In this document: positions 9,801 to 56,600 of the stretch, in pieces
How the letters are laid out: every line of letters starts with the position of its first letter
How positions within the stretch are numbered: position 1 is the stretch's first letter
Made by a program: the position numbers and the translations under genes
Notes under the pieces: model-generated
Database searches by the model: none
What the model saw: the letters and a program-made list of their open reading frames with translations, nothing else
Told to the model about the DNA's origin: nothing
Assembly: GCA_964057225.1 (NCBI GenBank)
Contig: OZ059898.1
Span: 4,526,001 to 4,590,000, forward strand
Direction: 5' to 3'
Length of the DNA: 64,000 nucleotides
Source of the DNA: Auanema rhodensis
Lineage: Eukaryota > Animalia > Nematoda

Positions 9801-10543
9801 AATGCAGCGTACGTTTTTTTTCTATACCATTTATACTTTGCATTGCTTACAGAACGACACCAAAGCCTCCGACAACTTTGCCATTAACGCCTCAAAGGCC
9901 CCCATCTACAATACCCCGAACTGGTCTTCCCAATATGCCTTCCCTTACCTCAGGATTACCCATTCCCCAACAACAACCCAGTAGTACTATTTGTCCGTAT
10001 AAAATATTTCTCAATCTTTAATTTAGGTGCATTAAACTTACCAAATAACGCGGAAAATGCTTTAATTCAAGCTTATATTCAGCAACAGTTGGCTTTACAA
10101 CAAGTTAGTTTAAGCATAAATATGATTTACCTTTGTCTGAATTAGGTACGGGATCAACAGCAACAACAGCAGCAGCAGCAACAACAACAGCAACAACAAC
10201 AGCAACAACAACAGCAGCATCAGCAACAACAGCAGCAACAGCAACATCAGCAACAGCAACAAACTGCTCAATCTGTACTTCAGCAACATCAAGCTGCCGC
10301 TGCCTCAGCGCAGCAACAAGCCTCTGGCCAAGCCAACCAACTACCACCCGGGCTCACACAAGCTCAGCAAAGCTTGTTATTGCAGCAACCTCTCATGCGC
10401 TTTGATCCCTCCCTTCTACAGTTGCAAATGCTGAATCACCTTGATCCTTCACGGATTCAAGCTCAACAACAAGCTCAACAACAAGCACAACAACAGCAAC
10501 AGCAACAGCAGCAGCAGCAGCAGCAACAACAACAACAACAACA

Positions 10544-10603
<60 letters not shown>

Positions 10604-11244
10604 GCAGCAACATCAACAGCAACAGCAACAACAAGCTCAGTCACAAGTTCAACATTTACAATCTCAACATGCTTCTGGTCAACCTCAACCTGGAAATACA
10701 TTTGAGTTTATTCGTGCTCATATAGAACAACAGCATCAGCAACAACAACTATTGCTTGCCACTCAACAGTCTGCAAATGCAGTTGCTTCTGGCCAATCAA
10801 CGGGCGATCCTAATCGTGATGCCTTATTGCGTCAGCTTATGAACCATTCCCAACTCCAGCAGCATCAGCAGCAATCACAAGCACCACAAGGTCCGACACC
10901 TCAGCAGCAGCAGCAGGTACTAAAGAGTTATATCAAAATTATTACTTACGCTCTTATCTTACAGATCAATCAGTTGTTAGTAGCACAAAGGCTCGGCTTT
11001 CCTGGTTTACATGGTAGGAGTTCTTTCTCATTCTTCTCTCATTAAGCAGTTTACAGGACTACCTCAAAATCCCGGACTACCTTCTCAATCCAATTTGGGC
11101 CAATTAGGGCAACCTCAGCTGTTTCAACATAATTTGCTTGGTCTGATGCCTGGATTGTATAATAAAGCCACATTCCCTGCTGGAATTCAACAGATGGCTC
11201 AGCTTAAACGTGAAGGCCCGGATTCCATTCCTAATGGCCGATAG
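3894..11244 (+). CDS. Multi-exon glutamine-rich protein with an AUTS2/FBRSL1/Tay-bridge-like motif; 5' end possibly upstream
   Basis: Phase-consistent GT-AG exons at about 3894-4027, 4870-4988, 6406-6733, 8651-8850, 9374-9514, 9557-9660, 9728-9808, 9853-9980, 10027-10103, 10147-10916, 10964-11013 and 11057-11244. The first in-frame ATG is at 3924. The protein has polyQ tracts, the motif AKKPSRWSSMHVKLCQDV, and ends ...LKREGPDSIPNGR*. The gene model is solid; the family call is an inference from one motif. Confidence 0.8.
6215..6236 (+). repeat. G22 homopolymer (G-quadruplex-capable) in an intron
   Basis: 22 consecutive G in AT-rich intronic sequence. Confidence 0.9.
10156..10635 (+). repeat. 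CAA/CAG polyglutamine-coding repeats
   Basis: Two Q-rich blocks; the longest uninterrupted run is 10488-10610 (41 Gln codons, mixed CAA/CAG). Confidence 0.9.
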
Positions 11245-15181: not shown

Positions 15182-18100
15182 ATGCCCACTAATCATGGCC
15201 AAGGTGGAAGAAGAATACTTGTAGGAAGAGTTGTACAACCACTTAAATTCTGTAGTAACTCCATAAGGTGACTTTATTTTTTAAAGTCAAAAACTTCTTA
15301 ATTTTATTTCAGTACATGTAAATATAGTGCATTTACGTTCTTTCCACGGTTCTTGTTTGAACAATTTAGACGATATAACAACGTATTTTTCTTGATAATA
15401 GCTCTTCTTCAGGTAATAATAATAATTTGGTCAAGATTATTACGTGTTTTTTTCAGCAAATTCCTGATGTTAGTCCTACTGGTCGCTATACAACTGCTTT
15501 CCCATTTCTAATAATTCTTTGTGTGTCTGCATTGAAAGAAATTTTTGAAGATATTGTATCGTAAAAAGATGAATAATTTTCTTAGTTTTATTTGTTCAGA
15601 AACGTCGGCGAGCTGATAGTAAAGTTAACAATTTTCACTCCGAAGTATTAGATATTACTGCTGGAGAGTGGCAAGTTAGAGCATGGAAAAACGTTAGTTA
15701 TAAAGCATAGCTTTATAAAATAATGCATTTTTAGGTTTGTGTAGGTGATATTGTGAGAATCGAAAATGATCAATTATTCCCTGCTGATCTTATCTTGCTT
15801 TCCTCCAGTGAAGCTCAAGGAATGGCATATATTGAAACATCGAACCTAGACGGTGAAACTAACCTGAAAATAAAACAAGTACTTAACTCTTTTTTCCTTC
15901 TATATTAACTTAAAACTTTAGGCTTCTGAATTAACCTCTTCAATAACAACTATGGACGGAATCAGACAGTTTCAATGTGAAATTGAATGTGAACACCCCA
16001 ATCGTAACGTGAATGACTTCAATGCTAATATTTCTTTTCAACATGAACAAAGGCATATAGGTAAGTATACAACTTAAATTTTTAAATTCACCACTATTAA
16101 TAGGAATTGAACAGTTATTACTTCGAGGTGCGAGGTTAAAAAATACTTCTTGGGTCTTTGGAGCTGTTATTTATACTGGACACGATGCTAAGCTTCTCAT
16201 GAATTCTAATACGGCTCCTTTAAAAAGGTTTTTTTTGGTAGATATTTAAATTTAAATTCTATTTTATAGTGGAACAGTCGATGTTAAGACCAACTATCGT
16301 ATTTTGATTTTGTTCGCTGTTCTAGTAGCCCTGGCAATTATAAGTGCTTCTGGATTGCAATGGTGGAAGTCAAGTCACCTCCCCCAGAGTTGGTACCTTG
16401 GCTTTTTAGGTATAATAAATTTCATATAATTAATTAACAAAGTAAATTCAGCGAATGATAGCCGTTCATCATTTGGATGGGGAGTTCTAACGTTCTTTAT
16501 TTTATATAATAATCTTATTCCTATCAGTTTACAAGTTACATTGGAGATTGTTAGATTTTTCCAGGTAATAGTTAATATTTTTCAAAACAATTTAATCTTT
16601 ATTCAAGGCTATTTATATCAATAATGATGTTGAAATGTATGACTCCAACAGTGATTCATGTGCTATTGCAAGAACATCAAATTTAAACGAAGAATTAGGA
16701 CAAGTATAGAAAAGTAGTTTTATATTATTTTGAAAGTATCATAAACACAGGTCAAATACTTGATGAGCGACAAAACTGGTACTTTAACTCGTAATGTTAT
16801 GAAGTTCAAACGTATATCTGCCAATAACTTTAATTATGGAGATGATGAAAATGATGAATTTTCCGATCGCCGCCTGATCAATGATTATGAATCGGTTACA
16901 CCTTTTTAAGTTTCATTTAATTAGTTTGTTTTAGAATCCTTCAGAAAACTTTAAGATCGGTGAGATGCTTCGGATGATGGCTGTATGCCATACTGTTGTC
17001 CCAGAAAGGAAAGATAATGGAGAGGTGATATCGTTTCTATTTATTTCTTAAGTTTATTATATTTTTTCAGCTTGTCTATCAAGGATCTTCGCCCGATGAA
17101 AGTGCACTTGTAAAAGGCGCTGCTAATATAGGATTTGTCTTTCATACTCGTCAACCACAGAAGGTTGTGATAAGAGTGGTAAAGCATTGTCTTTTAAATT
17201 TATGTTACGTGTTGACTCTTAGAATGGATCTGATGAACATATAGATATTCTGGATGTGATTGACTTTACCAGTGATCGTAAAAGGATGAGTGTAATTATT
17301 CGAGATTCTGATGGGAATATTAAGTTGTATACTAAAGGAGCTGTAAGAGATTTGTTTCCTTATATTCATTTCAATATTAATTATCAGGACACCATTATTT
17401 TCGATCGACTGACAGAAGGAAGCGAAGAAGATGTCAATATTTGTAAAGATCATTTGCGACAATATGCATCTTTTGGTTATAGAACTCTATGCTTTGCAAT
17501 GAAACATATCGATAAGGTTTTCATATTTTAGTTTATGTGGCATATCTTAATTTTGAAGAGTGATTATGAAAAATGGGCTCCAAAATATAAAGCTGCTGGT
17601 TTGAAGCTTGAAGGACGTGTACAAGCTCTAGCTGAGACTGCCGAAAGCTTTGAAACAAATATGCAATTAATCGGAGCTACAGCTATTGAGGATAAGCTAC
17701 AAGAGGTTTTAATTTATGATATTTATTATTACATCCAATATTCCTAATAGTATGTACCTGAAACGATAAGATCTTTAATGGCTGCTAAAATCAAGGTTTG
17801 GATGTTAACCGGAGATAAAAGGGAAACTGCAATCAACATAGGTACTATTTACATATCTAATTTGACTTAAAATGATTTATTCAGCCCATTCGTGTGCTCT
17901 ATGTGACCACAATACAGAGCTTTTAATTGTTGATAAGCATACGTATGACGAAACGTATGCGAAATTAGAACAACTAGCTAAACGTGCTATTGTATTGGAA
18001 CAAGATAATCGAGATTTTACTTTGGTCATCGACGGTAAATCTCTTGTGCATGCTTTAATAGGAGAAGCGCGAAGTCATTTTGGTCAGCTAGCCCTGCGCT

Positions 18101-21100
18101 GTACTTCTGTAGTGTGTTGTAGAATGAGTCCAATGCAAAAAGCAGAGGTTTAGTTCAATTTAAACGAACCCTATAAAATTTTTTTAGGTCGTAGAATTAG
18201 TTCGATCACTCTCTAAAAGTGTTGTCATGTCGGTCGGAGATGGAGCTAATGATGTTGCTATGATTCAAGCTGCTAATGTTGGTGTTGGTATATCAGGGGA
18301 AGAGGGTTTACAGGCCGCCTCAGCTTCTGATTATGCAATTCCTCGTTTCCACTTTTTACGTCGTTTATTATTGGTAATATTTGAGCAGTTTCTTAATTCT
18401 TACACTACTATTACTTTTCAGGTTCATGGTGCTTGGAATTATGATCGTTCCGTTAAAGTTATTCTCTACAGCTTTTATAAGAATATCACTCTATATATAA
18501 TAGAGCTTTGGTTCGCCATATTCTCTGCTTGGTCTGGACAGACTATATTCGAAAGATGGACGATTGGAATGTTCAATGTCATATTCACTGCTTGGCCTCC
18601 GGTAATTATCGGATTGTTTGATAGGCCTGTTCCGGCGGAACAAATGATGACTAGGCCGTCTCTATATCATAGCTTCCAGGAGAAAGCATTTACACTTCCG
18701 GTGATTAATTTTTATATAATGTCTATGATAACTAGTTTTTTAAGCAATTTGCATTATGGATAGGAATGGCTATTCTTCATTCTTTAATTCTCTTCTTCTT
18801 ATCTTATGCATTTTTGGAAGATCAAATTGTTTGGAGTAATGGAAGAGATGGTGGCTGGTTGATGTTAGGAAATTGTGCCTATACTGTATGTCCTCCCCCT
18901 GATTATTAAAAAAAGCAATTTTTTTAGTTTGTTGTTACTACGGTTTGTCTGAAAGCATTGCTGGAAAGTGATTCTTGGACTTGGCCCGTTCTTGTAGCTT
19001 GCTTTGGCTCTATTGCGCTTTGGCTGATCTTCTTGATTCTTTATGCACTGGTTTGTTTATTCCATCTTTCATGCTTAATTGTTTTCTGCTAGGTGTTCCC
19101 AACTATTTCTAAAAATATTGGAGCCGATATGTCTGGGATGGCATATATAATGATGTCGTCACCTAGCTTCTGGCTGGCTTTTATTTTTGTACCACTTTCT
19201 ACTCTTCTAATTGATCTCATAATTAAAAGGTACGTACATATTATATTGGATAAGGTGTCAGTGCTTGTATTTGTAATATATATTCAAATATCTTTAAAAA
19301 TTATGCGAGTGTGTTTCATTTGTTCCCTATCTTTGCTTTGTTTTCCAAATTCGCATGCAAACGTTTTTTATTTGTTGTTTGTACTTCTGTGCACTTTGAG
19401 AAAATTCGTGTTCCGTTTACAGCTATAGAAATCAGAAGGATTTACCAAAATATTTGTCGCGCTTTAAACAACATTCAACACTGTTTTCGAAGTTACGCTG
19501 CTGGAAAATAAGGGCGCATTGAATTTTCGAGATGTGCATTTTCACATCACAGCGTTAGTTTCTTACCACTGTCTTCTCTTCTGAAATTCAAATGATGCAT
19601 TTCTAACCAAATATTCTATCTAAAAAACTTTAATAATGTCTGGTTGTTAATAGGCTAGGTTATTTTTTCATATGAACAACTTATATTTTCAGTACTTTCA
19701 CTATAACATCTCCCACTCCTAGAGAAACAGTGATTGCTAAATTAAAACGGACACATTCTACTTCAGGATTTGAACGATTAGCAAGGTTAGTTTATTCGTT
19801 AAGAATTAAGTTTAGAGAGAATAATAGTTCTCTTTCTATCGCACTAAGCGCTAACATCAATTTTCTTTTTTTTTGTGTTTTTCTCGCGTGCGCTAATTTG
19901 TGGTTTAAGCAGTTCGACATGAAAGTGTCAGCACGATCTGTCTATCTGTTGTCTTATTCTTTTGATAAGTGTTTATTTTATCAGAAATATAATATACTTA
20001 TGGATGTGATCATCTTGAAGTAAAACTTTGTATTCTTTATGCACTTTGTCCTTTATACCGTTTTTTTCTCGTCGCTTTCCTTACCTTGCACCGAAATTCT
20101 GAATAGCCTGCTTTTCCAACTGTTGTCATGTGTTTGGCCTGTTTAGTGGTGGAGAGAAACTCAATGGATCAGTACCTGAGGACAGTGGACAGCGCCCCCC
20201 TACCAAAGAGCATTCTCGTCTCCGTGGCCATGACAATTTAGCCATGGATTATGGCAGTACTGAACTTCTACCTATGGCTTCTATAGCGACTCAAGATGGA
20301 AATCATGTGACTCGAATAGAAGTTCGGCCTTAATGATTAGAATTTTTATTCGAAATCATTGCTGCATCTACTTGTTGTTGTGGTTCGTCTTCTTCTCTGT
20401 TTCTTTATTACTAGTGTTACCTCTAATTCCATTGATATTCTTGCATCAGGGGTAGGTGAGTGCCTTTTCGATTCACCCACGTGTTTAGAAAATGTTCTTT
20501 TGCAAAGCAATTTTTATAGGTTAAGCCCATAAACGTTTTATATCAATATAAAAAAAACAATCTTCTATTGGTTTGCTTTAAGCACATGGAAGTTTGCTAA
20601 TCATATTCTGCACTCTATCATCTCGGTTTTGACCCTTTGTTAAAATTATCCAAGCGCAAGACAGATATAGATATAGTAGTCGATAATAATAAAATTACTG
20701 ATTTTTCATGTCTTTGGGGTGAGATGCACGGTTTTTTTAAATTTAAGTTTGTTTCTGCTCAAATTAAAAGCATGATGAGATTTCGATAGTGATTGTGTAA
20801 AAACATTGAACTGCTTTGAACCAGTTAAATTGAATTTTCGTAATAGTATTTTTCTTAAATTTATGAGAACTTTACAGTTATTCCATGATAGAAGATCAAG
20901 TTCGCTTATTACATGTAGTTGCAAACTCAACCGATAGTACTCGTACTTCTTGTGATCTTGCTGAAGAAGTTAGATGTATGTTATTTCTGTTGTTTTTGCT
21001 TTTATAAGTTTATATTTTTAAGATGGTTATTCCTATTCACAAGAAGAATTTGGTGCAGTAGCTCAAACTGACATAATACGTAACGTCGACTCTACTAGGC

Positions 21101-21120: not shown

Positions 21121-21722
21121 TAGCTCTTCTAAATGTTTATTTTTATTTGATCGAAATATATTTGATATTTTCATGATCTTATATTCAAAACTTCTTGTCA
21201 AAACCTTTTCTACTTTTTTTCTGTTTTTTGTGCCTTGGTTAACGGGATAAGTTCCACGTTAACACATTTTTTAAACGAATCACACTTACATTCAATATAA
21301 CTGCTTTGTAATTTATAATATTTTATCTTTTAAGCAGAACATTGATTACTATTATATTTCATTAACTGCCGAAACTTACGGGTATCTTTCAAATCACTTG
21401 TTATAGTTAAGGCAATTTATGCGATTTGCCTTTTTGTGATATATGTTTGCACGGTGTGTACGTTAATACTTCAAATATTCTTGTACCAAATATATGTAAA
21501 TAAATAAAGGATTTTATCTTATTTCTTCTAAAAACTTGATACACTTGACACAACCATAAAAAATCGCGAAAAATCTTTGAAATTGTTCTCAGCTTTTCTT
21601 GAACATATATCACAAAAGTACTCAATGCCCATTTTTAAATAATGATTTATCAGTAGTATATAAAATGTTGTTACAGATAAAAATAAAATAATAGGAGTTT
21701 CAACTTTTCAGATACAAAAGAT

Positions 21723-22135
21723 TAATACGCATCACTCCGGAAGTCCACGACAAATAAAGAAAAAAACTCTCATTGAAGCCAATATTTTCAGCATTCAGAT
21801 CACCCAATCCGAGAATTTGAGCCAACAGAGATAACTGGATGACAGCTCTTGCAATTTCTCCTTTCTTCTTGGCAATTTTACGTTCAAAAGCATCCCTAAA
21901 TACACAACAATTGAAAGGAAAAATTGACAAAATTGAAATCAACCTTTAATAAATAACTTTTAAAAATGCCAGTCTCTCTCCAGCATCACCAAGGTTTTGA
22001 ATACGACAATCTTTTCACAGCAAATATACACGATTTTGTCCGATGCAACAACATTAGGAATAAATTCAACGACTGTTCCAACTCCCAAAATCTTCAAAAG
22101 TTTGTAGATATATATAATTCGATTTTTTTCTGCTT
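21723..22135 (-). pseudogene. Frameshifted atypical (PI3/4K-like fold) kinase carried inside the Maverick relic
   Basis: Reconstructed across frameshifts: IELYIYKLLKILGVGTVVEFIPN...VYICCEKI...FKTL (N-lobe-like), LAQILGLGDLNAENIG (catalytic loop DxxxxN) and FVVDF (Mg-binding DF). A probable 48-nt GT-AG intron lies at 21896-21943. Confidence 0.7.
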
Positions 22136-22364
22136 ATGCGACTTTCCATTCTGATTGGCTTCTTAAGCGAAAGAAAAAAAATTTAAACCGGGCCGATTTA
22201 CTATTCGCTAAGAGAACCGAAAACCTTAAAGAATATATCACTGTTGTTCGAGAAAAGATTAGTCAAATAAGTAATTTATGATTTCTTTTCTTTGAATACT
22301 TGTTGAATAATCCACCTTAGACCTTTCGGCTTGCAAGTTGCTTATGAGTGGAGGGTATTTCTGC

Positions 22365-22470
22365 GTCTCTCATAAAGATTCCTCGGGGAATTTTTAATTC
22401 CAAGCACTTTAACAAGTTCTTCGATTTCATAGTTGGTTAATGGCTTCAGATCTTTCAAAAATTTTGCCAT
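22365..22470 (-). pseudogene. N-terminal stub of a Maverick adenain-like cysteine protease (PRO)
   Basis: MAKFLKDLKPLTNYEIEELVKVLGIKN-(1-nt frameshift)-RGIFMRD resembles the Polinton protease start PL(T/S)N.(D/E)...(K)L.I..FRG(V/I)FMRD. It is truncated before the catalytic His and Cys. Confidence 0.75.
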
Positions 22471-22818
22471 TTATTACCTTGAAAATTGTTCTAACGTGTT
22501 AAAAAATGGAAATGAGCAAAATTTTTGAAGAAGTGGTCCAGACTTTTTTAAAAATTGACATGTTTTTGCTCAATCTAAACATATTTTCAATAAAATAAAG
22601 CCTGAAAATGCTAAAAAAGTGTAGAAATTGAAGATTAAGTGGTCCAGTAACAACATTTTATATACTACTTTTACCTATTAAGTTTAATTTTTATGTTGTT
22701 TTGATTATAATAATTATTTATTTTGTAGGAAAACACAACATTTGAAATGAAGAAATATCTCTACCACTTATCCAAAAATACATTTAAAAAAAAAAATAAT
22801 AAGCCAATTTTGTTTTAG

Positions 22819-23688
22819 TCATATACAACAATATCCACTTTCACTGCTAGCTTCTTCATTCAACTCTAAATATTCAAAATTAGATTAGCTTGGAACAAAA
22901 AGACTCACTAATTGGTTCAGATTGTGATCGTTTATGCTCCAAGAATGGAAGATGGGCTACTGTATTGAAAACCTATCGAATATTTGTTATACTGTTATAC
23001 AACCCAAAATATTTCTTACAGTGTTAACATTATCTCCAGTTTTAGCAGAAGTTTCGATATAAACACCGCCATATTTCATTAATTCTATTCCTTCCGGTGG
23101 AATAAATCTAAGTTTTATATTTCAATGGTTTTTTTCATTTTTTATGGTTATGATACCTTTTGGATGATCGATCACATTTACTTGCTACTAAGACAATATG
23201 TATTTGACGAGATTTCCATGTTTGAACATATTGAACCCATCTTTGAATACTTTCTGATGACCGTGTATCTAAAATATACGAATCCGAAGATGGTTAATAG
23301 TATTTGAGAAACCTGTAGAATCAAAAACAATAACAGCTACGGCAGCTTCACGTATATATGATGGAGCTAAATGTCTAAAACGCTCTTGTCCAGCTGTATC
23401 CCATATTTGTAAACGTACTGACTGAATAACGTGATGCTATTTGTAATTTATTGAAAACATACTGTATTATCATCCAATATATACGTTTTATGTCGGAAAT
23501 CTATTCCTATTGTAGCGGAATTATCATCATCGAAGGAGTTTTCGAAAAATCTGTGTAAAATAGCAGTTTTTCCGGCTATACATCAAAAATTAAATACACG
23601 AAATTGAAAATATAAGGTCATTACCTCCAGAATCTCCTAACAGAACGACTTTAACATCATTATTTATCACTGCTGCAGTTTCTGTCAT
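22819..23688 (-). CDS. Divergent Rab GTPase, Rab6-like, 7 exons
   Basis: [53 protein letters not shown] and C-terminal GYCCI*. All introns are GT-AG and phase-consistent. Confidence 0.9.
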
Positions 23689-25059: not shown

Positions 25060-28000
25060 TTACTGAGATGTCTGTGGATGAGTTGGTCCACTATTCGATT
25101 GGACTGGTTGTGGTTGTGGCATTCCTGAAATATAAACAGGATTTTATCATGTTAGGGAGAAAATCTAACCTGGAGGAGAACTCTGTGAAGTGTAAACCGC
25201 TTGAGGAACTGAATTCTGCCTCGACATGGGTTGTTGTTGTTGTTGTTGGTTTGGGGGATGTTGAGGAGGAGCCTGATAAAATCCTGGATTGCCAGCTGAA
25301 ATATATAGTTAGTAACTTTAATAATAAGGAAGAAACTGACATGGTACATAGTTACCATACTGATCATGAATAACCATAGGCTGAGTAGCTCCCTGTTGCA
25401 TCATACCACCTTCCATGTGATGATGTTCGCCATACGGCTGCATATGTGGTACTGGCATACTTCCAGTGTTATACATAATAACCTGAGGATGAGTAGGATA
25501 CATAACCATATTCTGAAAGTAGACTATTATATTTCAGATAAAAATTATATACATACGGGACCCGAATGATATATTGGTTGTTGATGTGAAACCATTGGTG
25601 GTTGACTACCAGAAACTACAAATGGCTGTTGAGGTTGACTTGTCGCTTGTGGTGGAGCGGATGTAACTGTTGCAGGTGATCCTCTTCCGCCGCTAGCTTG
25701 TGATACTTGTGGCTAAAAATAATATAATGAGCATCTATAATTCAATTGTAATCACCTGAGCTGGAGACGCAGTTGGTTGAGGACCTGGAGTTGGAGGTTG
25801 GCTATTAGGCCCAGTAGAAGAAATTGCAGGAGTATGTGGTGGGTTACTGCCGTCATGAATAGGTTGACCAGAAGAATACCTTTGTTGACCTTGTGGTACA
25901 CTTTGCTGAGGAATTACATAACCCTGAATTACAAAATAAAAGCTAAGCAATGATGGTGACTAACCATTGGTGGACCAAATCTTTGTTGATATTGTTGTGG
26001 AGGAATTTGCTGTTGCCCCTGAGGAATCATTTGAGTTCCATCAACATATGTTTGTGGAGGAGCACTTGCCCCACCCGGAATATACTGGTATCCATATGGG
26101 ATCTGAATATCATATGAATAAACCAACATTGTTGTTTAATACCTGTTGCATAATCATTTGGTTTTGCCATTGAGTTCCAGCTTGCATCATAACAGCTCCG
26201 CCGGTTGCAGGACCAGCGGACCTTCTCTGGTTTCCTTGCGGAGCAGGAGCATAGACTTGAGTTGGAGGAGGAGCACCACCTCGTTGTGGTGCAATGGCCA
26301 TTTGACCAACCACAGGCGGTTGAACCAAATATTGCTGATAATTTCCCTAATAATTAAAAAAAATAATACTATAGATTAAAATTTACTCACTTGTACAAGA
26401 GAGAATCCTTGCGGGCCGCCTTGGAATTGAGGTACAACGGATCGTCCAGCCATTGGTGAGAAGACCCCAGGTGGTGGAATGGTTCCCTAAAACTTAGTTA
26501 ATAGCAACTTATATCACAGAGTAGCAATACCTGCATAGGCATACCAGCAGAAACAGCTCCCATTGGTAGCGGAGCAATGTTTTGAATTGGCTGTTGAGGT
26601 ATTGGTACAACCTATAAGTAACAGTTAAACAGAAAATTTAACTCGTAAACTCATACCTGGGTTGGAGTACTGCTTGGTTGAGTCATTCGGGGGGTAAAAG
26701 CAGGTGCATTAACGTTGAAAGCAAACTTTTTGGTTCTGAAAATTAAAATTGAACAAAATGTATTCTCTATTATCAAACCCTGCGTTAGAAGCGTCCTTGT
26801 CTTCTTTTTGATCATCTTTTTTATCATTAGAAGCATTTTCTTTTTCTTCATTGATTGTTGGCTCTTCAACAGAGGCATCACGAGACTCCTGTATCTTAAA
26901 AGATTTCTTAAAAATTAATAAAAATCGAAAAATACCTGAGTTTCATTGGATGTAGAAGCAACAATAGCTTCAGAGTTCGGTTGTGGATCCGCAGGAACAT
27001 TGGAAAGAGGAGATGAAGGAGGCACATGATCTGAATTAACTAAACTTTGAGATGATCACACTTTCATCAACATACTCTGATGCTGGGGTTGAGTACCTAA
27101 AAGACTGATAGGGGGACCTTTGTTCCATGCATTACCTGCGGGAACTGTAACTCTAGAAATATTTTCTGCCTGTCCGGCAGGTGAGCCGTGAGGCTGTGAA
27201 GAGTCCTGTAACAAGACTGAATGATGTGAAACAGTGCCAAACTTTACATTTTCGATCTTCTGGTCGTTCTTAGAAGCATGAATGGTAACATTTTTTCGCC
27301 AGTGCACTAAATCATTAAGACGTTTAGCTTAAAATTCATTATTTTCAAAAATAAAGATAAAAACCATACCTGGTCCCTGATTATTGCTACGATCTGCGTT
27401 GTTCCTATTAGCATTTTCAAGAATGACTAAATTAAAATAACATTAATTTTAAAAAACAAGCAGGTCCGTACCTTTAGGTTGGGCTTTGAATGTACTGTTT
27501 TCAAAAACTTTACCGGAGTTCTCCTTCCTAGCAGCAGTTTCTTTCCATTCTAAAAATCAGAAGAATTTACACATAATGATTTTAAAAAAAAAGATCTTTT
27601 ATCACGAAGCTAACCTTGAAATTGTTCTTGAACTTCTTGTCCTGTTGGTCTTTTATTTTGACCGGGTATGTAATGTTGTTGTCCAGCTCTTTGCTGCTGC
27701 CCGTACGGATTATTATACCTATTATTGGCACCTGTACTGCGTCCTTAACAAATTGAAATGTCTTCATTTATAGATATATACACATACTATCATTACCGCC
27801 TCCTTTTATACCATCAGCTCTACGGTTAACATTTACATTTCCGCCACGGCCGTTTCTGCTTACATTAGTATATGACCCTCTATATTAATAAAATGAGAAA
27901 CTAAGTCAAAAATTCAAACAAATCACCTTCCTCGACGAGTGGAGTTATCTAATTCCTCTTCAGTGGTAAGCTTATCTAAATCTCGCTCTTCGTCATCATT

Positions 28001-28884
28001 TTCCAGGCGGGAATAGTATTTGCTTGCTGCACTGTTCTCAATCTCTCGAGCAATTTGTTCAGCTCGTACGCGATCTTCCGGCGTTCCTTCGATCTCGGCA
28101 CTATATTTTAAAAAATAATCAAACAATATTATAACCAAAAGCATACGTTGTGTATTGCCTGAGATCATCTTCGAATGAAGATTGAACTCCAAGTTTCGAA
28201 TTTGCGGTGAACATGTCATTAACACTCCAACCATTTCTTGGAAAACGTGATCTTTGTTCAAGCTGAATATGTAAAAATGTATTAAACATATGAACTGTTA
28301 AAGTACAGCTGGCCCGGCAGGATCATAATCTTCAGCTTCGTCATCATCCCATTCCTTCAGTTCTTCGTCATCATTCTTTCCATTATTCTTCACTTGATAA
28401 TCTCTATCAGTGGCAAATCCTACATAACGAATTAAAATTAAGCGCTAGGTATAAGGCAATTTACCTTTAATTTTTTTCTCTTCATTTATTAAAGCAGAAA
28501 TGACAACAATGTCGCCGTATTCGAATATCATCTTCTCTTTTATTTCTTTTTTATTTGGTAACAAATTCATTTCGTTGGATTCGTTTTTTTCATACGCAAA
28601 TTTCAAGCCGATCGATAACTATAGTCATATAATTAACAAAAAGAATAAGAAAGAAATTGTACCTCATTTGAGCAAGCAGCAAAAATACCAACAAACTTGT
28701 TTCCATCTTTCAGCTCAACCATTACTTCTTTCCCCTGTACAAATAACTTGAAAGAGAAGATTTCATGAAAAACTTACATGCAAATCATTGATAATTGTTA
28801 CCAGTGAGGGATTGCCCGAAACTCCATCTAACTGGTTCTGCAAGACAAAAATTGAACTAAAATTTGAATAAAAATTTATACCAT
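25060..28884 (-). CDS. atx-2: Ataxin-2 homologue
   Basis: LSm region (IINDLHGKEVMVELKDGNKFVGIFAACS), LSmAD (GWSVNDMF...RAEQIAREIE...ENDDEERD), PAM2 (KFAFNVNAPAFTPR) and a Q/P-rich tail. The ATG is the last 3 nt of an exon (28882-28884), with an in-frame stop just upstream. Confidence 0.92.
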
Positions 28885-31094: not shown

Positions 31095-34000
31095 CTATTT
31101 CTTGAATTTTCTTGGTTTTAAGTTGTGAGATTTGACATTTACTCGATTTTTCTTCTTCAACTCCTTTATACTATTTAATTGTAATTCTAAATCCTCTAAA
31201 GCATGTTCAGACAACTTCTTATCATAGCTTGCAGCAATTTCAGGTGTGATATACTTTGACTTCTGAAAAGTATGATATAATATTAATTTCGACTTTATAA
31301 CTAACGATAATATTCGCAGAATGTATATTAGGTAAAGGCTTCATCAGCTCGACTCTCAACTCCTCCTTAACACGATCTTGTTTCAGAAGAAGTTCATTCA
31401 TGGAATGGTTTGCTTGTTCAATCTCTCCATATCTGAGAAAAATATAAATAATCAAAACTATTTTTTGTATGGCACCTATCGTCTAAGGTTAAATCAGCTT
31501 CACGAGCAGCTTTGGCAAACCAATCTTCGGTCAAGCGAATCTAAAATATCCTCATAAAAGTTTTCATGTATGGAAAATAATTTAATATTATATGAAAATG
31601 TTTCCAATTTTTATAAATTACTGTTTGTTCTTTTACCTTTTTAGCCCTGTAAAGTAAAACATCAAGATCAGATGCCAATTTTACACGATCCATCAAAGCA
31701 CTTTTTAGGGATAAACTATCCACTGGGAAAACAGGCAAATCATTTGCTGAAACTTATTAATACAAAACTGGGTCTAATAAACGTTACCACCTCTATTCAA
31801 GTTTTTACATATTTTTCTGTAAAGATGAGCATCTTTAGGATCAACCATTAAAACAGTAAGACCAGTCTCGCTGGCACGAGCAGTTCGCCCAGAACGATGA
31901 ATGTACATCTTCACAAAAACAAATTAACAAAACAAAAAAAAGTGCTGGAAATTTTACCTCTGCCGTTTTTGGAACTTGGTAATGAATAACATGCTCAATA
32001 CCTTTAATATCTAAGCCTCTAGCAGCTACATCAGTAGCCAAAAGAACACTATTTTCATTTCCTATAACATATAATAATAACTATTATTTTAAAGGAAAAC
32101 ACACCAGCAAACTTTTCAAGGTTCCTCAAACGCTGTCTTTGAATCATGTTAGCATGTAACATCATTGGATTCATTTTTAGATGACCAAGAATACCATATA
32201 AACGTCTAGAGGCATCAACAGAATTGGTAAAAATTAAAGTTCTTCCTTTGTATCTATTTAGTAAATAAACCACATTTGTATCCTTAAAAAAGTTCAATGA
32301 TTTTTACGATATAAACATTAATTCACTTTTTCTAAAAGTCCATTACAGTTCATACGAGTTTCCACAAGTTTTTCTGCCGTGCCAAAACTTCTACATACAT
32401 CAACGACTTTATGTTGTTTACGAATGCCAGTTTCTTCCAATAAATATTCTGGAAAATAATTTAAGAAACTTAATATTCAAAAGAAGAACTTACTAATCTT
32501 CTCCTTTGTACTTAACTCTTTCGTCTTTTGCGCAGGTAAAACGTAAGTCAAAGTAGCAGAAAACACAAGTGTTTGAAGCTTCTCATTTTTGGCATGAGTT
32601 GATTTGCTGAAACAAATATTCTTATTAAAAAAAGAAACAAATACCTTACCTTTTAACTGCAGATATTATGTGTTTTAACTCTCTAAAATGTCCTTGCTCA
32701 ACCATTCTATCAGTTTCATCAACCACCAAACATTGAACACCTTCTAGTTCGGTAAGATATTGACATTTTTCAGTCTATAATATAGAGATAGAACAATACA
32801 TATTTAAGATGTGAAACAGAGCTATACATTTTGCATTAAATCCCATAAACGTCCTGGAGTAGCAACAACAATTTCAGGCTTCGACTTGGCCATTACACGC
32901 AATTGTTTTTCTTCTGCTAAACCTCCCACAATACAGACCGACTAAATATCAAGAAATTTGAATAATTACTTTATTGATTGTAACTCACCTTTATTGCAGT
33001 AAACTGACATAAGGAATCAAGAACTTTTTTAATTTGAACTACTAATTCGCGCGTCGGGGCTATAATGAAAGCACGGGGTCCATTACCATCACGTTCATCA
33101 GTCAGTATTCGAGATATAACCGGAATAGAAAATGCTAGTGTTTTTCCACTTCCCTATAAAATATTCAGAATTCAATAATAGTTGCTATATTTATATACAG
33201 TTTCAGCTGCTCCTAAGATATCAACACGATCACGAACTGCAGGGGAAAGCACTTGCTTTTGAATTTCTGTAGCTTTTCCAAACCTTTAAAATAAAATTAT
33301 TAAAATTTAATGTTTCTTGACAAACTTCAGTTTTTTCAGCGCTTTTAGGATTGGTTCTGGTAAATAGAAATCGGCCCAATCAGACATATCAAAGTCAACA
33401 TCTTTTTCTTCTTCTTGATCATCACTTTTTGCCACAGTTTCTTTTTTCACTCTCTTTTTGGAAATTTCCTTCTCGTGTTCAGCAAATTGAACTTTACGCT
33501 TAGTCCCTTGTTCCTTTTTCTTATTTTCCTTTTCTTTTCTTTTATCTCTCTTAGTTTTAGCTTTCACATTTTTCTCTATAACTTCCGACTTTTCGACTTC
33601 TTCCGTAACTTCTGATGTATCTTCTTCTTTAAACAAAAATATTATATCGATTAAATAAATTTTTTTTACCAATTTCAGTTACAGATGACAGTTTGATCAT
33701 TTTCCCCTTCATTTTCTCTTTCTTTTTTCTGGGATTTTGTTGTTGACCTTAAAAATTAAAAAACACTATTATCATTTTTTTAAAATTTACCCTCAGAATC
33801 CTTGGTAGCATCGGACTTTTTATTTTTTCTTTTATTTCTATTACGTTTTTTCTTCTTATTTTCCGATGCTAAAATTCTTTTGTAAGAAATTAAAATGTAA
33901 ATGTAACTACCTAAACTTGGAACTTCATTTTCAGGTTGTTGGGATTTTTCAACCTGATCAGGTTTTTCAAGACTTTCAGCTTTTCCAACATTTTCATTTT

Positions 34001-39358: not shown

Positions 39359-40480
39359 ATGTCGAAAAATATTAAAACTCCAACAAATCAAAAGATCCTC
39401 ACAAACGTAGCTGTGGTTAGAATGAAAAAGACAGGAAAGCGTTTTGAAATAGCTTGTTATAAAAATAAAGTTGTGAATTGGCGTAATAAAACGTAGGTAG
39501 TATTCTTCTTATAGGTACATAAATATATGTTTAAGCGAAAAAGATATTGATGAAGTTCTCCAAACACATACGGTTTTTTCAAATGTTTCTAAGGGACAGT
39601 TAGCAAAACGCGAAGATCTTATCGCAGCATTTGGAATAGATGATCAACTTGATATATGTAAAACGGTTTATCATTCCAATGTTTCATATCCAGAAATTCA
39701 TTCTTGTTTATTTGCAGATTTTAGACAAGGGAGATTTACAAGTGTCTGATAAAGAGAGGCAGGCAGCAACTAATCAATCTTTGAAGGAGGTTTCATAGTG
39801 CATATAGCTGGAGTATTATTGATTTTGCAGGTTTCGCAACTAATAGCTTCAATGGTTGTCAATCCGGAAACTAAAAGACCAATTCCTCCTAATGCAATTG
39901 ACAAAGCACTTCAAGAAGTGCATTTCAGCTTAAAACCTAACCGTAGTGCGAAACAACAGGTTGGTTCATATGCTATTTCTTTCGCGTTCGTTTTGTGGCC
40001 GCGTGGCGCAATGGATAACGCGTCTGCCTACGGAGCAGAAGATTGTAGGTTCGAATCCTGCCGTGGTCGTAAATTTTGAATTTTTCTGCTAAAGGATTTT
40101 TATGATTTTTTATGTTTACAGGCTCTTGAAGCTATTCCAAAATTGAAGGAAACAATGAAGATCGAAAGAGCTAAAATGCGCATAAGAGTTTCTTTGCCTA
40201 CCAAAGAAGGAAAGATCTTACAAAATAAATTTAAAGCACTTTACAATGAAATTGAAATTGAGGATTGGTCGGAAACAGGATTGGAAATTGTAAATTAGCT
40301 ATACATTATTGAATTGTTATCTAATATTGTCTTTTTTTATTGCAGATAGGCTTAATCGAACCCGGAGAGTTTAGAAGCATTGATGAATGTATCAGAAATG
40401 AATGCCATGGACAGGGTCGTATGGAAATCTTAAGTTTGAAAGATGTTCGTGAAGGTGAATTCGAGATCTCAATATCCTAA
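39359..40480 (+). CDS. sbds-1: SBDS/Sdo1 ribosome maturation factor
   Basis: [38 protein letters not shown]..., six exons, [12 protein letters not shown]...[10 protein letters not shown]. Confidence 0.95.
39997..40069 (+). tRNA. tRNA-Arg (anticodon ACG) inside sbds-1 intron 39960-40121
   Basis: 73-nt cloverleaf GGCCGCG...CGTGGTC-G with A-box TGGCGCAATGG, anticodon loop CTACGGA, B-box GGTTCGAATCC and downstream T-runs as a Pol III terminator. Confidence 0.97.
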
Positions 40481-49741: not shown

Positions 49742-51160
49742 ATGGTTCTTCAATCTATTATTATAATTTCTTTACTATATGTTACTGTATCTGCTCAATT
49801 ATGTTTGAGTGACTATGATTGTCCTAAAACATTAGTTTGCAAGAAAATTACTAATGCACCATATAACGTTTGTGGTACAGGAATAGGAAATGGAGTTTCG
49901 GTTCGATAATTTATTAAATTTGATATTAAGAGATCTTTTAGCCTATGAAAAATCAATGTACATCAGATATACAATGTCCAGATTTAAATGTATGTATCTT
50001 GGATTCTATTGGATTAAAAGTATGCCAAAATCCTAGTAAGTTATAAATTAAAAATTTATAAAATATAATATTTGTAAATTTATAATATTTTTTTAGCTTA
50101 TTGTTCAACTAATGCACAATGTTCAAGTGGAAAAACTTGTCAGGTTCATTATAATGGATTACATTTATGTCAATATGACAGTAGAACTCTAGGAAAAAGT
50201 TTGAACTTTCATTTCTTTGAGTAATAACTTGATATCATAATAGGTGATAAAGAATCATGTACAAAAGATTCCGATTGTCGAATTGGACTGCGATGTGTGG
50301 ATTATTTTGGTAAATTAATGTGTAAAGTAAGTTGAAGACTGATTTTTAATACAATACAACGTAAATGAAACATTAGAACTTAAACATTGGTGGAGGTGCT
50401 CAACCTACATCCGCTTGTCTATCATCTACTGATTGTTTTAATGGTCAGAGCTGTGTATATTTAGCTTCCAATAAACAATATGTTTGCATGTGGTTAGGAG
50501 GTAAAGAATATTATTATATAAAATATGTTAAATTGGTTTTTAGGCTTTACATCTTCCGTAGGAGGTAATGTTGGTGGCAACACAGGCAAAAATCCTTCAG
50601 TACCATCAGTTGGAGGAAATGTTGGCGGCAACACAGGCAAAAATCCTTCAGTACCATCAGTTGGAGGAAATGTTGGTGGAAACACAGGCAAAAATCCTTC
50701 AGTACCATCAGTTGGAGGAAATGTTGGTGGAAACACAGGCAAAAATCCTTCAATACCATCAGTTGGAGGAAATGTTGGTGGAAACACAGGCAAAAATCCT
50801 TCAATACCATCAGTTGGAGGAAATGTTGGTATATCAGCTATAGCAATTCGTGGGAATATTGGTGAAGAAGCAAACTCAGATCCAAATAGTAATATTATTC
50901 AACATATTGGTGGAAACATTGAAAATCCAACAGATCCAAGTTATGATCCATATTTTCATCCTAAAGTTGGTGGACATGTTGGTGCTGCAAGTAGTTTTAA
51001 CAATCCGGAAAGCGTTAATGGATTCAATTCTATAGGAGAACCATTTGATTCTTCAGCATTTAATACTGGAACAAATCAATTATTCCCATTCAGTATTGAT
51101 CAAGATAATGAATATAAAAGTAAGTATAAATATAATCCATATTTACAATTTAATGTTTAA
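49742..51160 (+). CDS. Secreted Cys-rich protein with five CxxxxxCxxxxxC...C modules and a Gly/Asn/Pro tandem-repeat tail
   Basis: Signal peptide MVLQSIIIISLLYVTVSA, about one 4-Cys module per exon, and a last exon from 50544. The 3' end is uncertain because an unused GTAAGT donor sits at 51120. Confidence 0.8.
50558..50830 (+). repeat. 51-bp coding tandem repeat, 5.3 copies (VGGNVGGNTGKNPS[V/I]PS)
   Basis: Near-identical units starting at 50558, 50609, 50660, 50711 and 50762, plus a partial unit at 50813. Confidence 0.95.
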
Positions 51161-53642: not shown

Positions 53643-56600
53643 ATGTATTTACTACTATATTTACTAACAATATTCATAACATCAATCAACAGTATTTTAT
53701 ATGATCAACGTCCAGATCTGAAATTTTCGGATTTGAAAATTGTAATTTTTAAATTTTAATAAGTAAATTTATTATAATAATTTTCCTTATAGAAAACAAA
53801 AGAGTCAATCCAAGAGATAGTTTTATTGAAATATGGAACATTAAAAACAGGCGGAAATTATAATATTACTATTCATAAAATTACTAAGGTTTTTTTAAAA
53901 ATTTAATAATTTATCATAATAAATATAATTTCAGAGAGGTTGGTCATCTTAAATTATATAATTATATAAATATTTAAACATATTTTCTTTTATTCTAGCA
54001 ATTGAATGTGAATCTAATAGCACGTTATGCCCAAAAATCCAAAGTCGAGACAAAGTAGTTTATGATTTCCTTTACCCGTCATATTCCACAACTAAATATT
54101 CGTCAACCAGTAATTGTAAGTAAATTTAAATTTAAGATAAGATTGAATAATTGATTCTTAAAAAAATATTTTATTCTATATTACAGTATACTGTGATCAA
54201 GTTACAATTAGTTGTACAGGATACGGTGGGATTGGCTTTTTTTCAGATACAGAAATAGAAGATGATTCTGCAGTAAATCCATTAAATTTTAATAGTTTAT
54301 AACATATAATATAGATCGAATTTGACTTAACCAATGATGTGAATACCTTAGTTACAATTTCTATAACCTTAACATGTAGTGACATTGGTTGGACTGTTCC
54401 ACCAGATACAGTACCACTTTCTATTCTAGGATGTGTAGGTAATCAAACGAAAACTATTCATTACTATTTCATTTGAAATTTCTTTCTTTTTCTTTTTAGC
54501 CGAGGTACCTTACATACCTCCATCTACGACCACCAGCACAACACCATCTACAACCACCAGCACAACGTCTACAACGACTCCATCTACAACCACCAGCACA
54601 ACGTCTACGACGACTCCATCTACGACCACCAGCACAACGTCTACAACGACTCCATCAACGACAACAAGCACAACACCTTCTACGACCACCAGCACAACGT
54701 CTACGACAACTCCATCAACGACAACAAGCACAACACCTTCTACGACCACCAGCACAACGTCTACAACGACTCCATCTACGACCACCAGCACAACCTCTAC
54801 GACAACTCCATCAACGACAACAAGCACAACACCTTCTACGACAACCAGCACAACGTCTACAACGACTTCATCTACGACCACCAGCACAACCTCTACGACA
54901 ACTCCATCAACGACAACAAGCACAACACCTTCTACGACCACCAGCACAACGTCTACGACAACTCCATCAACGACAACAAGCACAACTCCATCAACCACAA
55001 CAAGCACAACACCTTCTACGACCACCAGCACAACGCTTACAACGACTCCATCAACGACAACAAGCACAACACCATCTACGACCACCAGCACAACGTCTAC
55101 GACGACTCCATCAACGACAACAAGCACAATGTCTACGACGACTCCATCAACGACAACAAGCACAACACCTTCTACGACCACCAGCACAACGTCTACAACA
55201 ACTCCTTCTACGACCACCAGCACAACGTCTACAACAACTCCATCTACGACCACCAGCACAACGTCTACGACAACTCCATCTACGACCACCAGCACAACGT
55301 CTACGACGACTCCATCAACGACAACAAGCACAACACCTTCTACGACCACCAGCACAACGTCTACGACAACTCCATCAACGACAACAAGCACAACTCCATC
55401 AACCACAACAAGCACAACACCTTCTACGACCACCAGCACAACGCTTACAACGACTCCATCAACGACAACAAGCACAACACCATCTACGACCACCAGCACA
55501 ACGTCTACGACGACTCCATCAACGACAACAAGCACAACGTCTACGACGACTCCATCAACGACAACAAGCACAACACCTTCTACGACCACCAGCACAACGT
55601 CTACAACAACTCCTTCTACGACCACCAGCACAACGTCTACAACAACTCCATCTACGACCACCAGCACAACGTCTACGACAACTCCATCTACGACCACCAG
55701 CACAACGTCTACGACGACTCCATCAACGACAACAAGCACAACACCTTCTACGACCACCAGCACAACGTCTACGACAACTCCATCAACGACAACAAGCACA
55801 ACTCCATCAACCACAACAAGCACAACACCTTCTACGACCACCAGCACAACGCTTACAACGACTCCATCAACGACAACAAGCACAACACCATCTACGACCA
55901 CCAGCACAACGTCTACGACGACTCCATCAACGACAACAAGCACAACGTCTACGACGACTCCATCAACGACAACAAGCACAACACCTTCTACGACCACCAG
56001 CACAACGTCTACAACAACTCCTTCTACGACCACCAGCACAACGTCTACAACAACTCCATCTACGACCACCAGCACAACGTCTACGACAACTCCATCTACG
56101 ACCACCAGCACAACGTCTACGACGACTCCATCAACGACAACAAGCACAACACCTTCTACGACCACCAGCACAACGTCTACGACAACTCCATCTACGACCA
56201 CCAGCACAACGTCTACGACGACTCCATCAACGACAACAAGCACAACACCTTCTACGACCACCAGCACAACGTCTACGACAACTCCATCAACGACAACAAG
56301 CACAACACCATCTACGACCACCAGCACAACGTCTACGACGACTCCATCAACGACAACAAGCACAACACCATCTACGACCACCAGCACAACGTCTACGACA
56401 ACTCCATCAACGACAACAAGCACAACGTCTACAACAACTCCATCTACGACCACCAGCACAACGTCTACCACGACTTCATCTACGACAACAAGCACAACTC
56501 CATCAACGACAACAAGCACAACGTCTACAACAACTCCATCTACGACCACCAGCACAACGTCTACAACAACTCCATCGACGACCACCAGCACAACGTCTAC

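What the first reader, a model, noticed from the sequence alone, without database searches (positions are those of the whole stretch)
21652..22669. Miniature Maverick/Polinton relic hidden between tat-1 and a Rab gene
Seen: a perfect 23-bp TIR beginning AGTAGT, a 6-bp TSD with one mismatch (TTTATC/TTTACC), a subterminal direct repeat AAGTGGTCCAG (22531 and 22637), and a frameshifted protease N-terminus (PLTNYEIEELVKVLGIKN/RGIFMRD). Known: Mavericks are virus-like elements of roughly 15-20 kb with AG...CT, often AGTAGT, termini, 6-bp TSDs and an adenain-like protease. Inference: this is a ~1.0 kb deletion derivative that kept both ends. It may belong to a non-autonomous family mobilised in trans, which would imply a full-length Maverick lineage in this genome. 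The ORF track does not show it.
Basis: partly seen in the sequence, partly recalled or inferred. Interest (0 to 1): 0.85.

Follow-up and report, generated by a model that had tools for sequence, protein, structure and literature searches.

The report
Miniature Maverick remnant with kinase fragments

Summary
The sequence features are real. There is a perfect 23-nt terminal inverted repeat (21652-21674 / 22647-22669). It starts AGTAGT and ends ACTACT, and is flanked by TTTATC/TTTACC (5 of 6 bases). These ends match the published Maverick end motif 5'-(AGT)2//(ACT)2-3' with a 6-bp target duplication.

It holds two fragments of one gene family in opposite orientation: minus strand 21734-22115 and plus strand 22162-22281. 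Its only relatives are unnamed nematode proteins. The full-length one has 424 residues and a weak PI3/PI4-kinase-type catalytic-loop signature. This fits the KRMA kinases, described as Maverick cargo lying next to a terminal repeat.

The "protease stub" found no support in Pfam, PDB sequences or the protein search. Open frames of its length occur about 9 per kb here.

No Maverick core gene and no second copy lie in the window.

Best reading: a Maverick-derived, terminus-retaining, inert remnant, a new member of a known kind. I could not tell whether it decayed in place or arrived already defective.

The parts
21646..21651 (.). left copy of the putative 6-bp target-site duplication (TTTATC)
   Evidence: 5 of 6 identical to 22670-22675; chance 0.8%
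21652..21674 (+). left terminal inverted repeat, 23 nt, begins AGTAGT
   Evidence: end motif as in PMC8097293
21652..22669 (.). whole element, 1018 bp, 31.8% G+C
21734..22115 (-). broken fragment of a KRMA-like kinase gene. It covers about residues 216-317 of the 424-residue relative P0005, including the catalytic-loop region, and its 3' end points to the left terminus. It is read in three frames (two frame changes, one of which may be an intron), has one or two in-frame stops, and is cut off at both ends.
   Evidence: kinase-type signature
22162..22281 (+). second fragment of the same gene family, in the opposite orientation. It covers the last ~39 residues (386-424 of P0005) and the stop codon, and its 3' end points to the right terminus. 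It has no internal break and is cut off at its 5' side.
   Evidence: P0005, P0007 and P0009 match the plus strand, E 3e-6 to 1e-9
No database support.
22471..22646 (.). right subterminal region, 27% G+C, with the 11-nt direct repeat at 22531 and 22637
22647..22669 (-). right terminal inverted repeat, 23 nt, ends ACTACT
22670..22675 (.). right copy of the putative target-site duplication (TTTACC)
17223..18760 (+). left neighbour: exons of a phospholipid-translocating P-type ATPase (tat-1-like). Only the part checked is given.
   Evidence: (PhoLip_ATPase_C, E 3e-39)
22819..23688 (-). right neighbour: Ras/Rab-family small GTPase gene. The bounds are approximate. Its probable stop codon lies about 150 nt from the element's right end.
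   Evidence: Ras family, E 5e-12, 5e-8, 2e-4 on three exons searched apart

Best explanation
This is the remnant of one Maverick/Polinton integration between two convergent host genes, probably in a nematode. Shown: both extreme termini survive as a perfect 23-nt inverted repeat with the AGTAGT...ACTACT end motif, and they are flanked by a 6-bp duplication with one later change. Shown: about half of the interior is two fragments of a nematode-only kinase-like gene, lying head to head so that each 3' end points to the nearer terminus. Inferred: that gene belongs to the KRMA family, which Mavericks carry as cargo beside a terminal repeat with the gene's 3' end facing the repeat. Inferred: the insertion was made by a retroviral-type integrase, which leaves the 6-bp duplication. 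More than 90% of a 13-25 kb element was then lost and part of it inverted. Nothing in it can be translated as it stands, so it is inert. The 'protease stub' is most likely a chance open frame in the sequence between the cargo gene's stop codon and the terminus. I lean about 3:2 to decay in place over arrival as an already defective, rearranged copy integrated with the help of a complete element. The evidence here does not separate the two.
For: The inverted repeat is far beyond chance. The 6-bp flank match has a chance of 0.8%, and 6 bp is the best-fitting length. The end motif 5'-(AGT)2//(ACT)2-3' with 6-bp duplications is reported as the commonest Maverick end (PMC8097293); 6-bp duplications and long terminal repeats are called typical of Polintons (PMC3014272). 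The 80-codon minus-strand frame finds P0001 and P0002 at 80-85% identity. The profile search finds only 7 proteins in 1.84 billion; the named ones are from Caenorhabditis sp. 36, Auanema sp. and Acrobeloides nanus. Three of them give the same weak PI3_PI4_kinase match over the catalytic region. The family profile's best PDB match is the catalytic loop of ATR kinase. KRMA is described as a ~430-residue Maverick cargo with a kinase fold, lying in the 2-5 kb between a terminal repeat and the integrase. In one circular form a single repeat joins the 3' end of the polymerase gene to the 3' end of the cargo gene. A. nanus has a dozen or more listed KRMA genes. Mapping of the relatives onto the window gives the strands and bounds.
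Against: The inverted repeat is only 23 nt, whereas described Polintons have 100-1500 bp and those of C. elegans 744 bp. No core Maverick gene is shown in the element or anywhere in the window. The duplication is imperfect. The end motif is documented in my sources for vertebrate Mavericks, not for nematode ones. KRMA membership is inferred only: the structure model was too poor to compare (pLDDT 40.7), the ubiquitin-like domain was not detected by sequence, and the kinase matches are below the curated cut-offs. Only about 23% of KRMA genes lie within 6 kb of a Maverick gene. There is a single copy in the window.
Confidence: 0.65

Rival explanations
1. One reading: a deletion derivative whose right-hand gene stub is the N-terminus of the Maverick adenain-like protease (PRO).
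For: There is an ATG-initiated open frame 176 nt inside the right terminus, reading inward. The pieces are so short that negative searches are weak evidence, and the one large protein search used on it could only see proteins of 23-73 residues.
Against: No Pfam family, Peptidase_C5 included, at E up to 10 for either piece. No adenovirus-type protease among PDB sequences at E up to 10. Open frames of 42 codons or more occur about 9 per kb in this window. In the nematode Maverick described, the genes nearest the terminal repeat are cargo and polymerase, both with their 3' ends facing it, so a protease start next to a terminus is not the native layout. The stub abuts the 3' end of the cargo-like fragment, as untranslated subterminal sequence would.
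Confidence: 0.2
2. A non-autonomous element of another DNA-transposon superfamily (MITE-like or MULE-like) that captured fragments of a KRMA-like host gene.
For: A short terminal repeat and a ~1 kb size are typical of MITEs. A MULE carrying a former Maverick cargo gene is documented in C. briggsae. Most KRMA genes are not next to Maverick genes.
Against: No 2-, 3-, 4-, 8- or 9-bp duplication fits the flanks; only 6 bp does. The AGTAGT/ACTACT ends are the Maverick motif. No transposase-like frame is in the window.
Confidence: 0.12
3. Not a mobile element: a KRMA-like pseudogene scrambled by a local inversion, with the inverted repeat and flank match as by-products.
For: The two gene fragments are in opposite orientation, which needs an inversion-like event. 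There is a single copy in the window.
Against: A perfect 23-nt inverted repeat lies exactly at the borders, outside both fragments, carries the Maverick end motif and is flanked by a 5/6 duplication. This is not what an inversion leaves. The arms share nothing beyond the 23 nt.
Confidence: 0.06

Closest known systems
Maverick/Polinton elements of nematodes (e.g. Polinton-1_CB; the C. elegans Polintons with Polinton_CE_TIR)
   Same: Terminal inverted repeats, a 6-bp target duplication, the AGT-AGT / ACT-ACT end motif, and a cargo-type gene next to a terminus with its 3' end facing outward.
   Different: 1.0 kb instead of 13-25 kb. The inverted repeat is 23 nt instead of 100-1500 bp. No polymerase, integrase, ATPase, capsid or demonstrable protease gene. 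I did not compare the termini with any nematode Maverick DNA (barred fetch).
KRMA kinases (Cwal-KRMA-1 and 532 listed relatives), cargo genes of nematode Mavericks
   Same: The full-length relative P0005 has 424 residues against ~430. The family is found only in nematodes, in distant genera. It has a kinase-type catalytic signature, and the window's fragments lie beside the termini.
   Different: The window holds only about one third of the coding length, in two inverted, broken pieces. Membership rests on description, not on a named hit. The fold comparison with CtkA/HipA/MavQ could not be made.
Polinton remnants at the C. elegans eri-6/7 locus
   Same: Partial Maverick copies of several sizes that kept terminal-repeat sequence, with inversions nearby. 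The authors also could not tell whether a copy was partial on arrival or deleted later.
   Different: Those remnants come from the polymerase end and keep about 700 bp of terminal repeat, and some act in host splicing. No host role is indicated here.
MITEs and deletion derivatives of cut-and-paste transposons
   Same: Small size, short terminal inverted repeats, no intact gene, and dependence on enzymes made elsewhere if ever moved.
   Different: The duplication length and end motif point to an integrase-type, self-synthesising parent. No multi-copy family has been shown.

Membership tests
Maverick/Polinton | terminal inverted repeats | tested here: met
   23 nt, 100% complementary, but far shorter than the 100-1500 bp described
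Maverick/Polinton | 6-bp target-site duplication | tested here: met
   5 of 6 identical; chance 0.8%; no other length fits
Maverick/Polinton | conserved end motif 5'-(AGT)2//(ACT)2-3' | tested here: met
   against PMC8097293; the motif is documented there for vertebrate Mavericks
Maverick/Polinton | protein-primed DNA polymerase B and retroviral-type integrase | tested here: not met
   None in the element or among 62 long open frames of the window. I therefore file it as a derivative, not as a Polinton proper.
Maverick/Polinton | adenain-like maturation protease (PRO) | tested here: inconclusive
   The stub pieces give no hit in Pfam, PDB sequences or the protein search, but the pieces are too short for a firm negative.
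Maverick/Polinton | same termini on full-length copies in the same genome | not tested
KRMA kinases | ~430-residue protein with an N-terminal ubiquitin-like fold | tested here: inconclusive
   P0005 has 424 residues. No ubiquitin-type hit by sequence. The N-terminal part is absent from the window.
KRMA kinases | kinase fold like CtkA / HipA / MavQ with the catalytic residues kept | tested here: inconclusive
   Weak PI3_PI4_kinase hits in three relatives (E 7e-4 to 0.012, below cut-off). ATR catalytic loop, E 0.1. The AlphaFold model was unusable (pLDDT 40.7).
KRMA kinases | restricted to nematodes, with a patchy spread over distant genera | tested here: met
   7 hits in 1.84 billion proteins. 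The named ones are from Caenorhabditis, Auanema and Acrobeloides. A. nanus KRMA genes are listed in Data S2.
KRMA kinases | relatives lie within Mavericks or within 6 kb of Maverick genes | not tested
   This would need a look-up of the relatives' contigs, which I left out.
Peptidase C5 (adenain) | His / Glu-or-Asp / Cys catalytic residues in a recognisable domain | tested here: not met
   No such domain in any frame of the element. The sequence downstream of the stub is the kinase-like gene.
MULE / other cut-and-paste superfamilies | duplication of 2-4 or 8-10 bp typical of those superfamilies | tested here: not met

The most novel reading that the evidence does not exclude
The element is a member of a non-autonomous 'mini-Maverick' family. 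On this reading it began as a defective genome made of two cargo-side ends, formed by a strand switch during protein-primed replication, and was integrated with enzymes from a complete element. That would mean about 23 nt of terminus is all the integration step needs.
Probability: 0.2. Interest if true: 0.6.

Novelty: new member of a known kind. Interest (0 to 1): 0.35.

Why it matters
It marks a past visit of a Maverick lineage carrying a KRMA-type cargo gene to this genome, about 150 nt beyond the stop codon of a Rab-like gene. Maverick remnants are common in nematodes, so the remnant itself is ordinary. Two points are of modest interest. A copy only 1 kb long has kept both exact termini. 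Both of its cargo fragments point outward, as if both halves came from the same end of the parent. If a census showed further copies with the same build and different flanks, it would be a rare documented case of a miniature, non-autonomous Maverick.

Tried and rejected
Pfam on six minus-strand open frames of the element gave nothing. PDB sequence searches with the 80-, 42-, 45- and 37-codon frames gave nothing meaningful.

The search for homologous proteins with the 42-residue stub found no candidate; it could see only proteins of 23-73 residues. With P0001 it found only P0001 and P0002.

AlphaFold2 of P0005 on an 11-row alignment gave pLDDT 40.7, so I ran no fold search. P0005 alone against PDB and Pfam gave no ubiquitin-type hit.

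Rfam found nothing credible in or near the element. A sensitive blastn of the element against the rest of the window found no second copy.

I considered the 11-nt subterminal direct repeat as a binding-site pair and rejected it as evidence, because such repeats are common by chance. I also considered whether the stub is the ubiquitin-like domain of the cargo gene and rejected that: no KRMA-like relative matches 22284-22669 (best E 1.5).

Full report
**What is in the sequence**

The window at 21652-22669 is bounded by a perfect 23-nt inverted repeat, 21652-21674 and 22647-22669.
- With up to three mismatches the 23-mer occurs only at these two places in 64 kb. None of 100 shuffles gave two matches.
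- It is the longest perfect inverted repeat in the window that is not a microsatellite.
- The element begins AGTAGT and ends ACTACT.
- The six bases outside each end are TTTATC and TTTACC. Identity of 5/6 or more occurs in 0.8% of 6-mer pairs at the same spacing in this window, and no duplication length from 2 to 10 fits better.
- The arms share nothing beyond the 23 nt.
- The 11-nt direct repeat at 22531 and 22637 is real and unique in the window. However, 45% of simulated sequences of this size and composition contain an exact direct repeat of 11 nt or more, so it carries little weight.

**The neighbours**

I searched the exons apart, by reference, and did not join them; the joined spliced-model step was left out.
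- Left, plus strand: a phospholipid-translocating P-type ATPase (PhoLip_ATPase_C, E 3e-39).
- Right, minus strand: a Ras/Rab-family GTPase, with three exons matching the Ras family at E 5e-12 to 2e-4.

The two genes converge. The element's right end lies about 150 nt beyond the probable stop codon of the GTPase gene. Nothing in the window looked human.

**The interior is not a protease gene**

The longest minus-strand frame (80 codons) found two unnamed predicted proteins at 80-85% identity, P0001 and P0002.

A profile of these three sequences was searched against 1.84 billion representative proteins and found seven. The named ones come from Caenorhabditis sp. 36 (P0005, 424 residues, on a 12.7-Mb record), Auanema sp. 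JU1783 (P0004) and Acrobeloides nanus (P0007). The rest come from short assembled contigs.

I mapped these proteins back on the window with tblastn. There are two blocks and nothing else in 64 kb:
- **Minus strand, outer bounds 21734-22115.** This covers about residues 216-317 of P0005.
- **Plus strand, 22162-22281.** This covers residues 386-424 and the stop codon.

The two fragments lie head to head, so each 3' end points to the nearer terminus. Together they cover about one third of the coding length.

Breaks, counted but not placed:
- The gene is in two pieces of opposite orientation.
- The N-terminal ~215 residues and ~68 internal residues are absent.
- The minus-strand piece is read in three frames. 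That makes two frame changes, one of which may be an intron that relatives' gene models splice out; I could not resolve this.
- The minus-strand piece holds one or two in-frame stops, depending on the relative used.
- The plus-strand piece has no internal break.

**What the gene family is**

- Three relatives give the same weak Pfam match to the catalytic part of PI3_PI4_kinase (E 7e-4, 0.009, 0.012; all below the curated cut-off).
- The family profile's best PDB match is the catalytic-loop and metal-binding stretch of ATR kinase (E 0.1).

Widen et al. (bioRxiv 10.1101/2022.07.12.499685) describe KRMA as follows:
- It is a cargo protein of nematode Mavericks, about 430 residues long.
- The family has 532 members with a patchy spread, and 23% lie within 6 kb of Maverick genes.
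- Cargo lies in the 2-5 kb between a terminal repeat and the integrase.
- In a circular C. bovis form, one terminal repeat joins the 3' end of the polymerase gene to the 3' end of the cargo gene.

Their Data S2 lists a dozen or more KRMA genes in Acrobeloides nanus, the species of P0007.

The size, the nematode-only patchy distribution, the kinase signature and the position beside a terminus all fit KRMA. No named hit proves it:
- The structure model of P0005 was too poor to compare (pLDDT 40.7).
- The ubiquitin-like part was not detected by sequence.

I hold KRMA membership as a good inference, not as a tested fact.

**The protease stub**

I searched each frame on its own.
- No Pfam family at E up to 10.
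- No adenovirus-type protease among PDB sequences at E up to 10.
- No candidate in the large protein search, which could see only proteins of 23-73 residues and therefore says nothing about full-length proteases.
- None of the kinase-like relatives matches this region.
- Open frames of 42 codons or more occur about nine times per kb in this window.

The protein I had in mind as comparator is the adenain-like maturation protease (PRO; Peptidase C5). It did not come back as a hit, so the likeness remains an untested recollection.

The stub lies in the ~365 nt between the cargo-like stop codon and the right terminal repeat. In the described layout that stretch is subterminal, untranslated sequence. 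I rate the protease reading at about 0.2.

**Is it a Maverick?**

Three features are met:
- Barreat and Katzourakis (PMC8097293) report conserved 6-bp end motifs for Mavericks. The commonest is 5'-(AGT)2//(ACT)2-3', found together with perfect 6-bp target duplications. The window's element has exactly this motif.
- PMC3014272 and the nematode survey give a 6-bp (range 5-8 bp) duplication and 100-1500 bp terminal repeats as typical.
- Terminal repeats are present.

Against membership:
- The repeat is very short.
- The defining genes, polymerase and integrase, are absent from the element and from the 62 long open frames of the rest of the window. Those frames gave only host families: P-type ATPase, SBDS, WD40/Utp12 and Erf4.

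I therefore file it as a Maverick-derived remnant, not as a Polinton proper.

**How it got this way**

Two routes fit, and each needs at least two events.
- **(a) Decay in place.** A full-length copy integrated here, then lost more than 90% of its length by internal deletion, with an inversion of the segment holding the middle of the cargo gene.
- **(b) Arrival already defective.** A genome in which both halves derive from the cargo-side end, as a strand switch during protein-primed replication would give (inference from what is known of such replicons), later shortened on one side and integrated by enzymes supplied by a complete element.

The evidence does not separate them:
- One mismatch in 29 paired positions of repeat plus duplication is compatible with the small number of frame changes arising after insertion, so the break load does not decide.
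- The closest relatives (P0001, P0002, P0010, P0011) continue at least 40 residues beyond the point where the window's fragment gives way to the terminal repeat. They are therefore not copies of the same deletion form.
- P0009, from a 1014-bp contig, joins the same two gene segments collinearly. It is an independent deletion form.
- Remnants are reported as the rule, and miniature non-autonomous Mavericks are barely mentioned in the searchable literature.

I lean about 3:2 to decay in place.

I did not scan the public contig collections for the 23-nt terminus. I did not fetch any Maverick by accession. This is why copy number, other duplications, long copies and empty sites remain untested.

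I report the following slips in my private working (thinking), as required.
- I briefly recalled from memory a short N-terminal stretch and motif pattern of adenovirus protease.
- I once wrote a short hypothetical string mixing letters of two frames of the kinase-like fragment.
- I reasoned about roughly where a frame change or intron might lie.

I stopped each time.

**Verdict**

This is a real, well-bounded, inert Maverick-derived remnant. Its interior is broken KRMA-like cargo, not protease. It is a new member of a known kind, of modest interest.

Noticed in passing
window 54439-63078: One open frame of 2880 codons on the plus strand, made of degenerate 24/36/60/96-nt tandem units rich in Thr, Ser and Pro codons (a mucin-like repeat). 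G+C is ~50% with extreme strand skew (GC skew -0.5 to -0.6).
   Followed up: partly
window 10146-11042: Long CAA/CAG repeat that encodes a poly-glutamine stretch in a 299-codon open frame. No Pfam family.
   Followed up: partly
window 21432-21447 and 21602-21617: A perfect 16-nt inverted repeat with 154 nt between the arms, just left of the element. It may be a hairpin or another small element.
   Followed up: no
window 50561-50830: Tandem repeat of a 51-nt unit, 5.3 copies, 97% matches, inside a 212-codon open frame.
   Followed up: no
window 39997-40069: One tRNA gene on the plus strand. It is the only Rfam match at gathering score in the window.
   Followed up: no
window, one of the 62 long open frames of alignment A3 (not within 14-26 kb): One frame gave a weak Pfam match to Herpes_U59 (E 1.7e-4). 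I did not find which frame among the 20 re-scanned singly. It is probably spurious.
   Followed up: partly
protein P0009 (61 residues, from a 1014-bp assembled contig): A collinear in-frame fusion of the same two segments of the kinase-like gene that the window holds in inverted order. It is an independent deletion form elsewhere, on a contig about as long as this element.
   Followed up: partly
window 27926-28297 (minus) and other host frames: Host genes around the element: an LsmAD-type (ataxin-2-like) exon, a DEAD-box helicase-like exon at 31841-32297, an SBDS domain, WD40/Utp12 and Erf4.
   Followed up: partly
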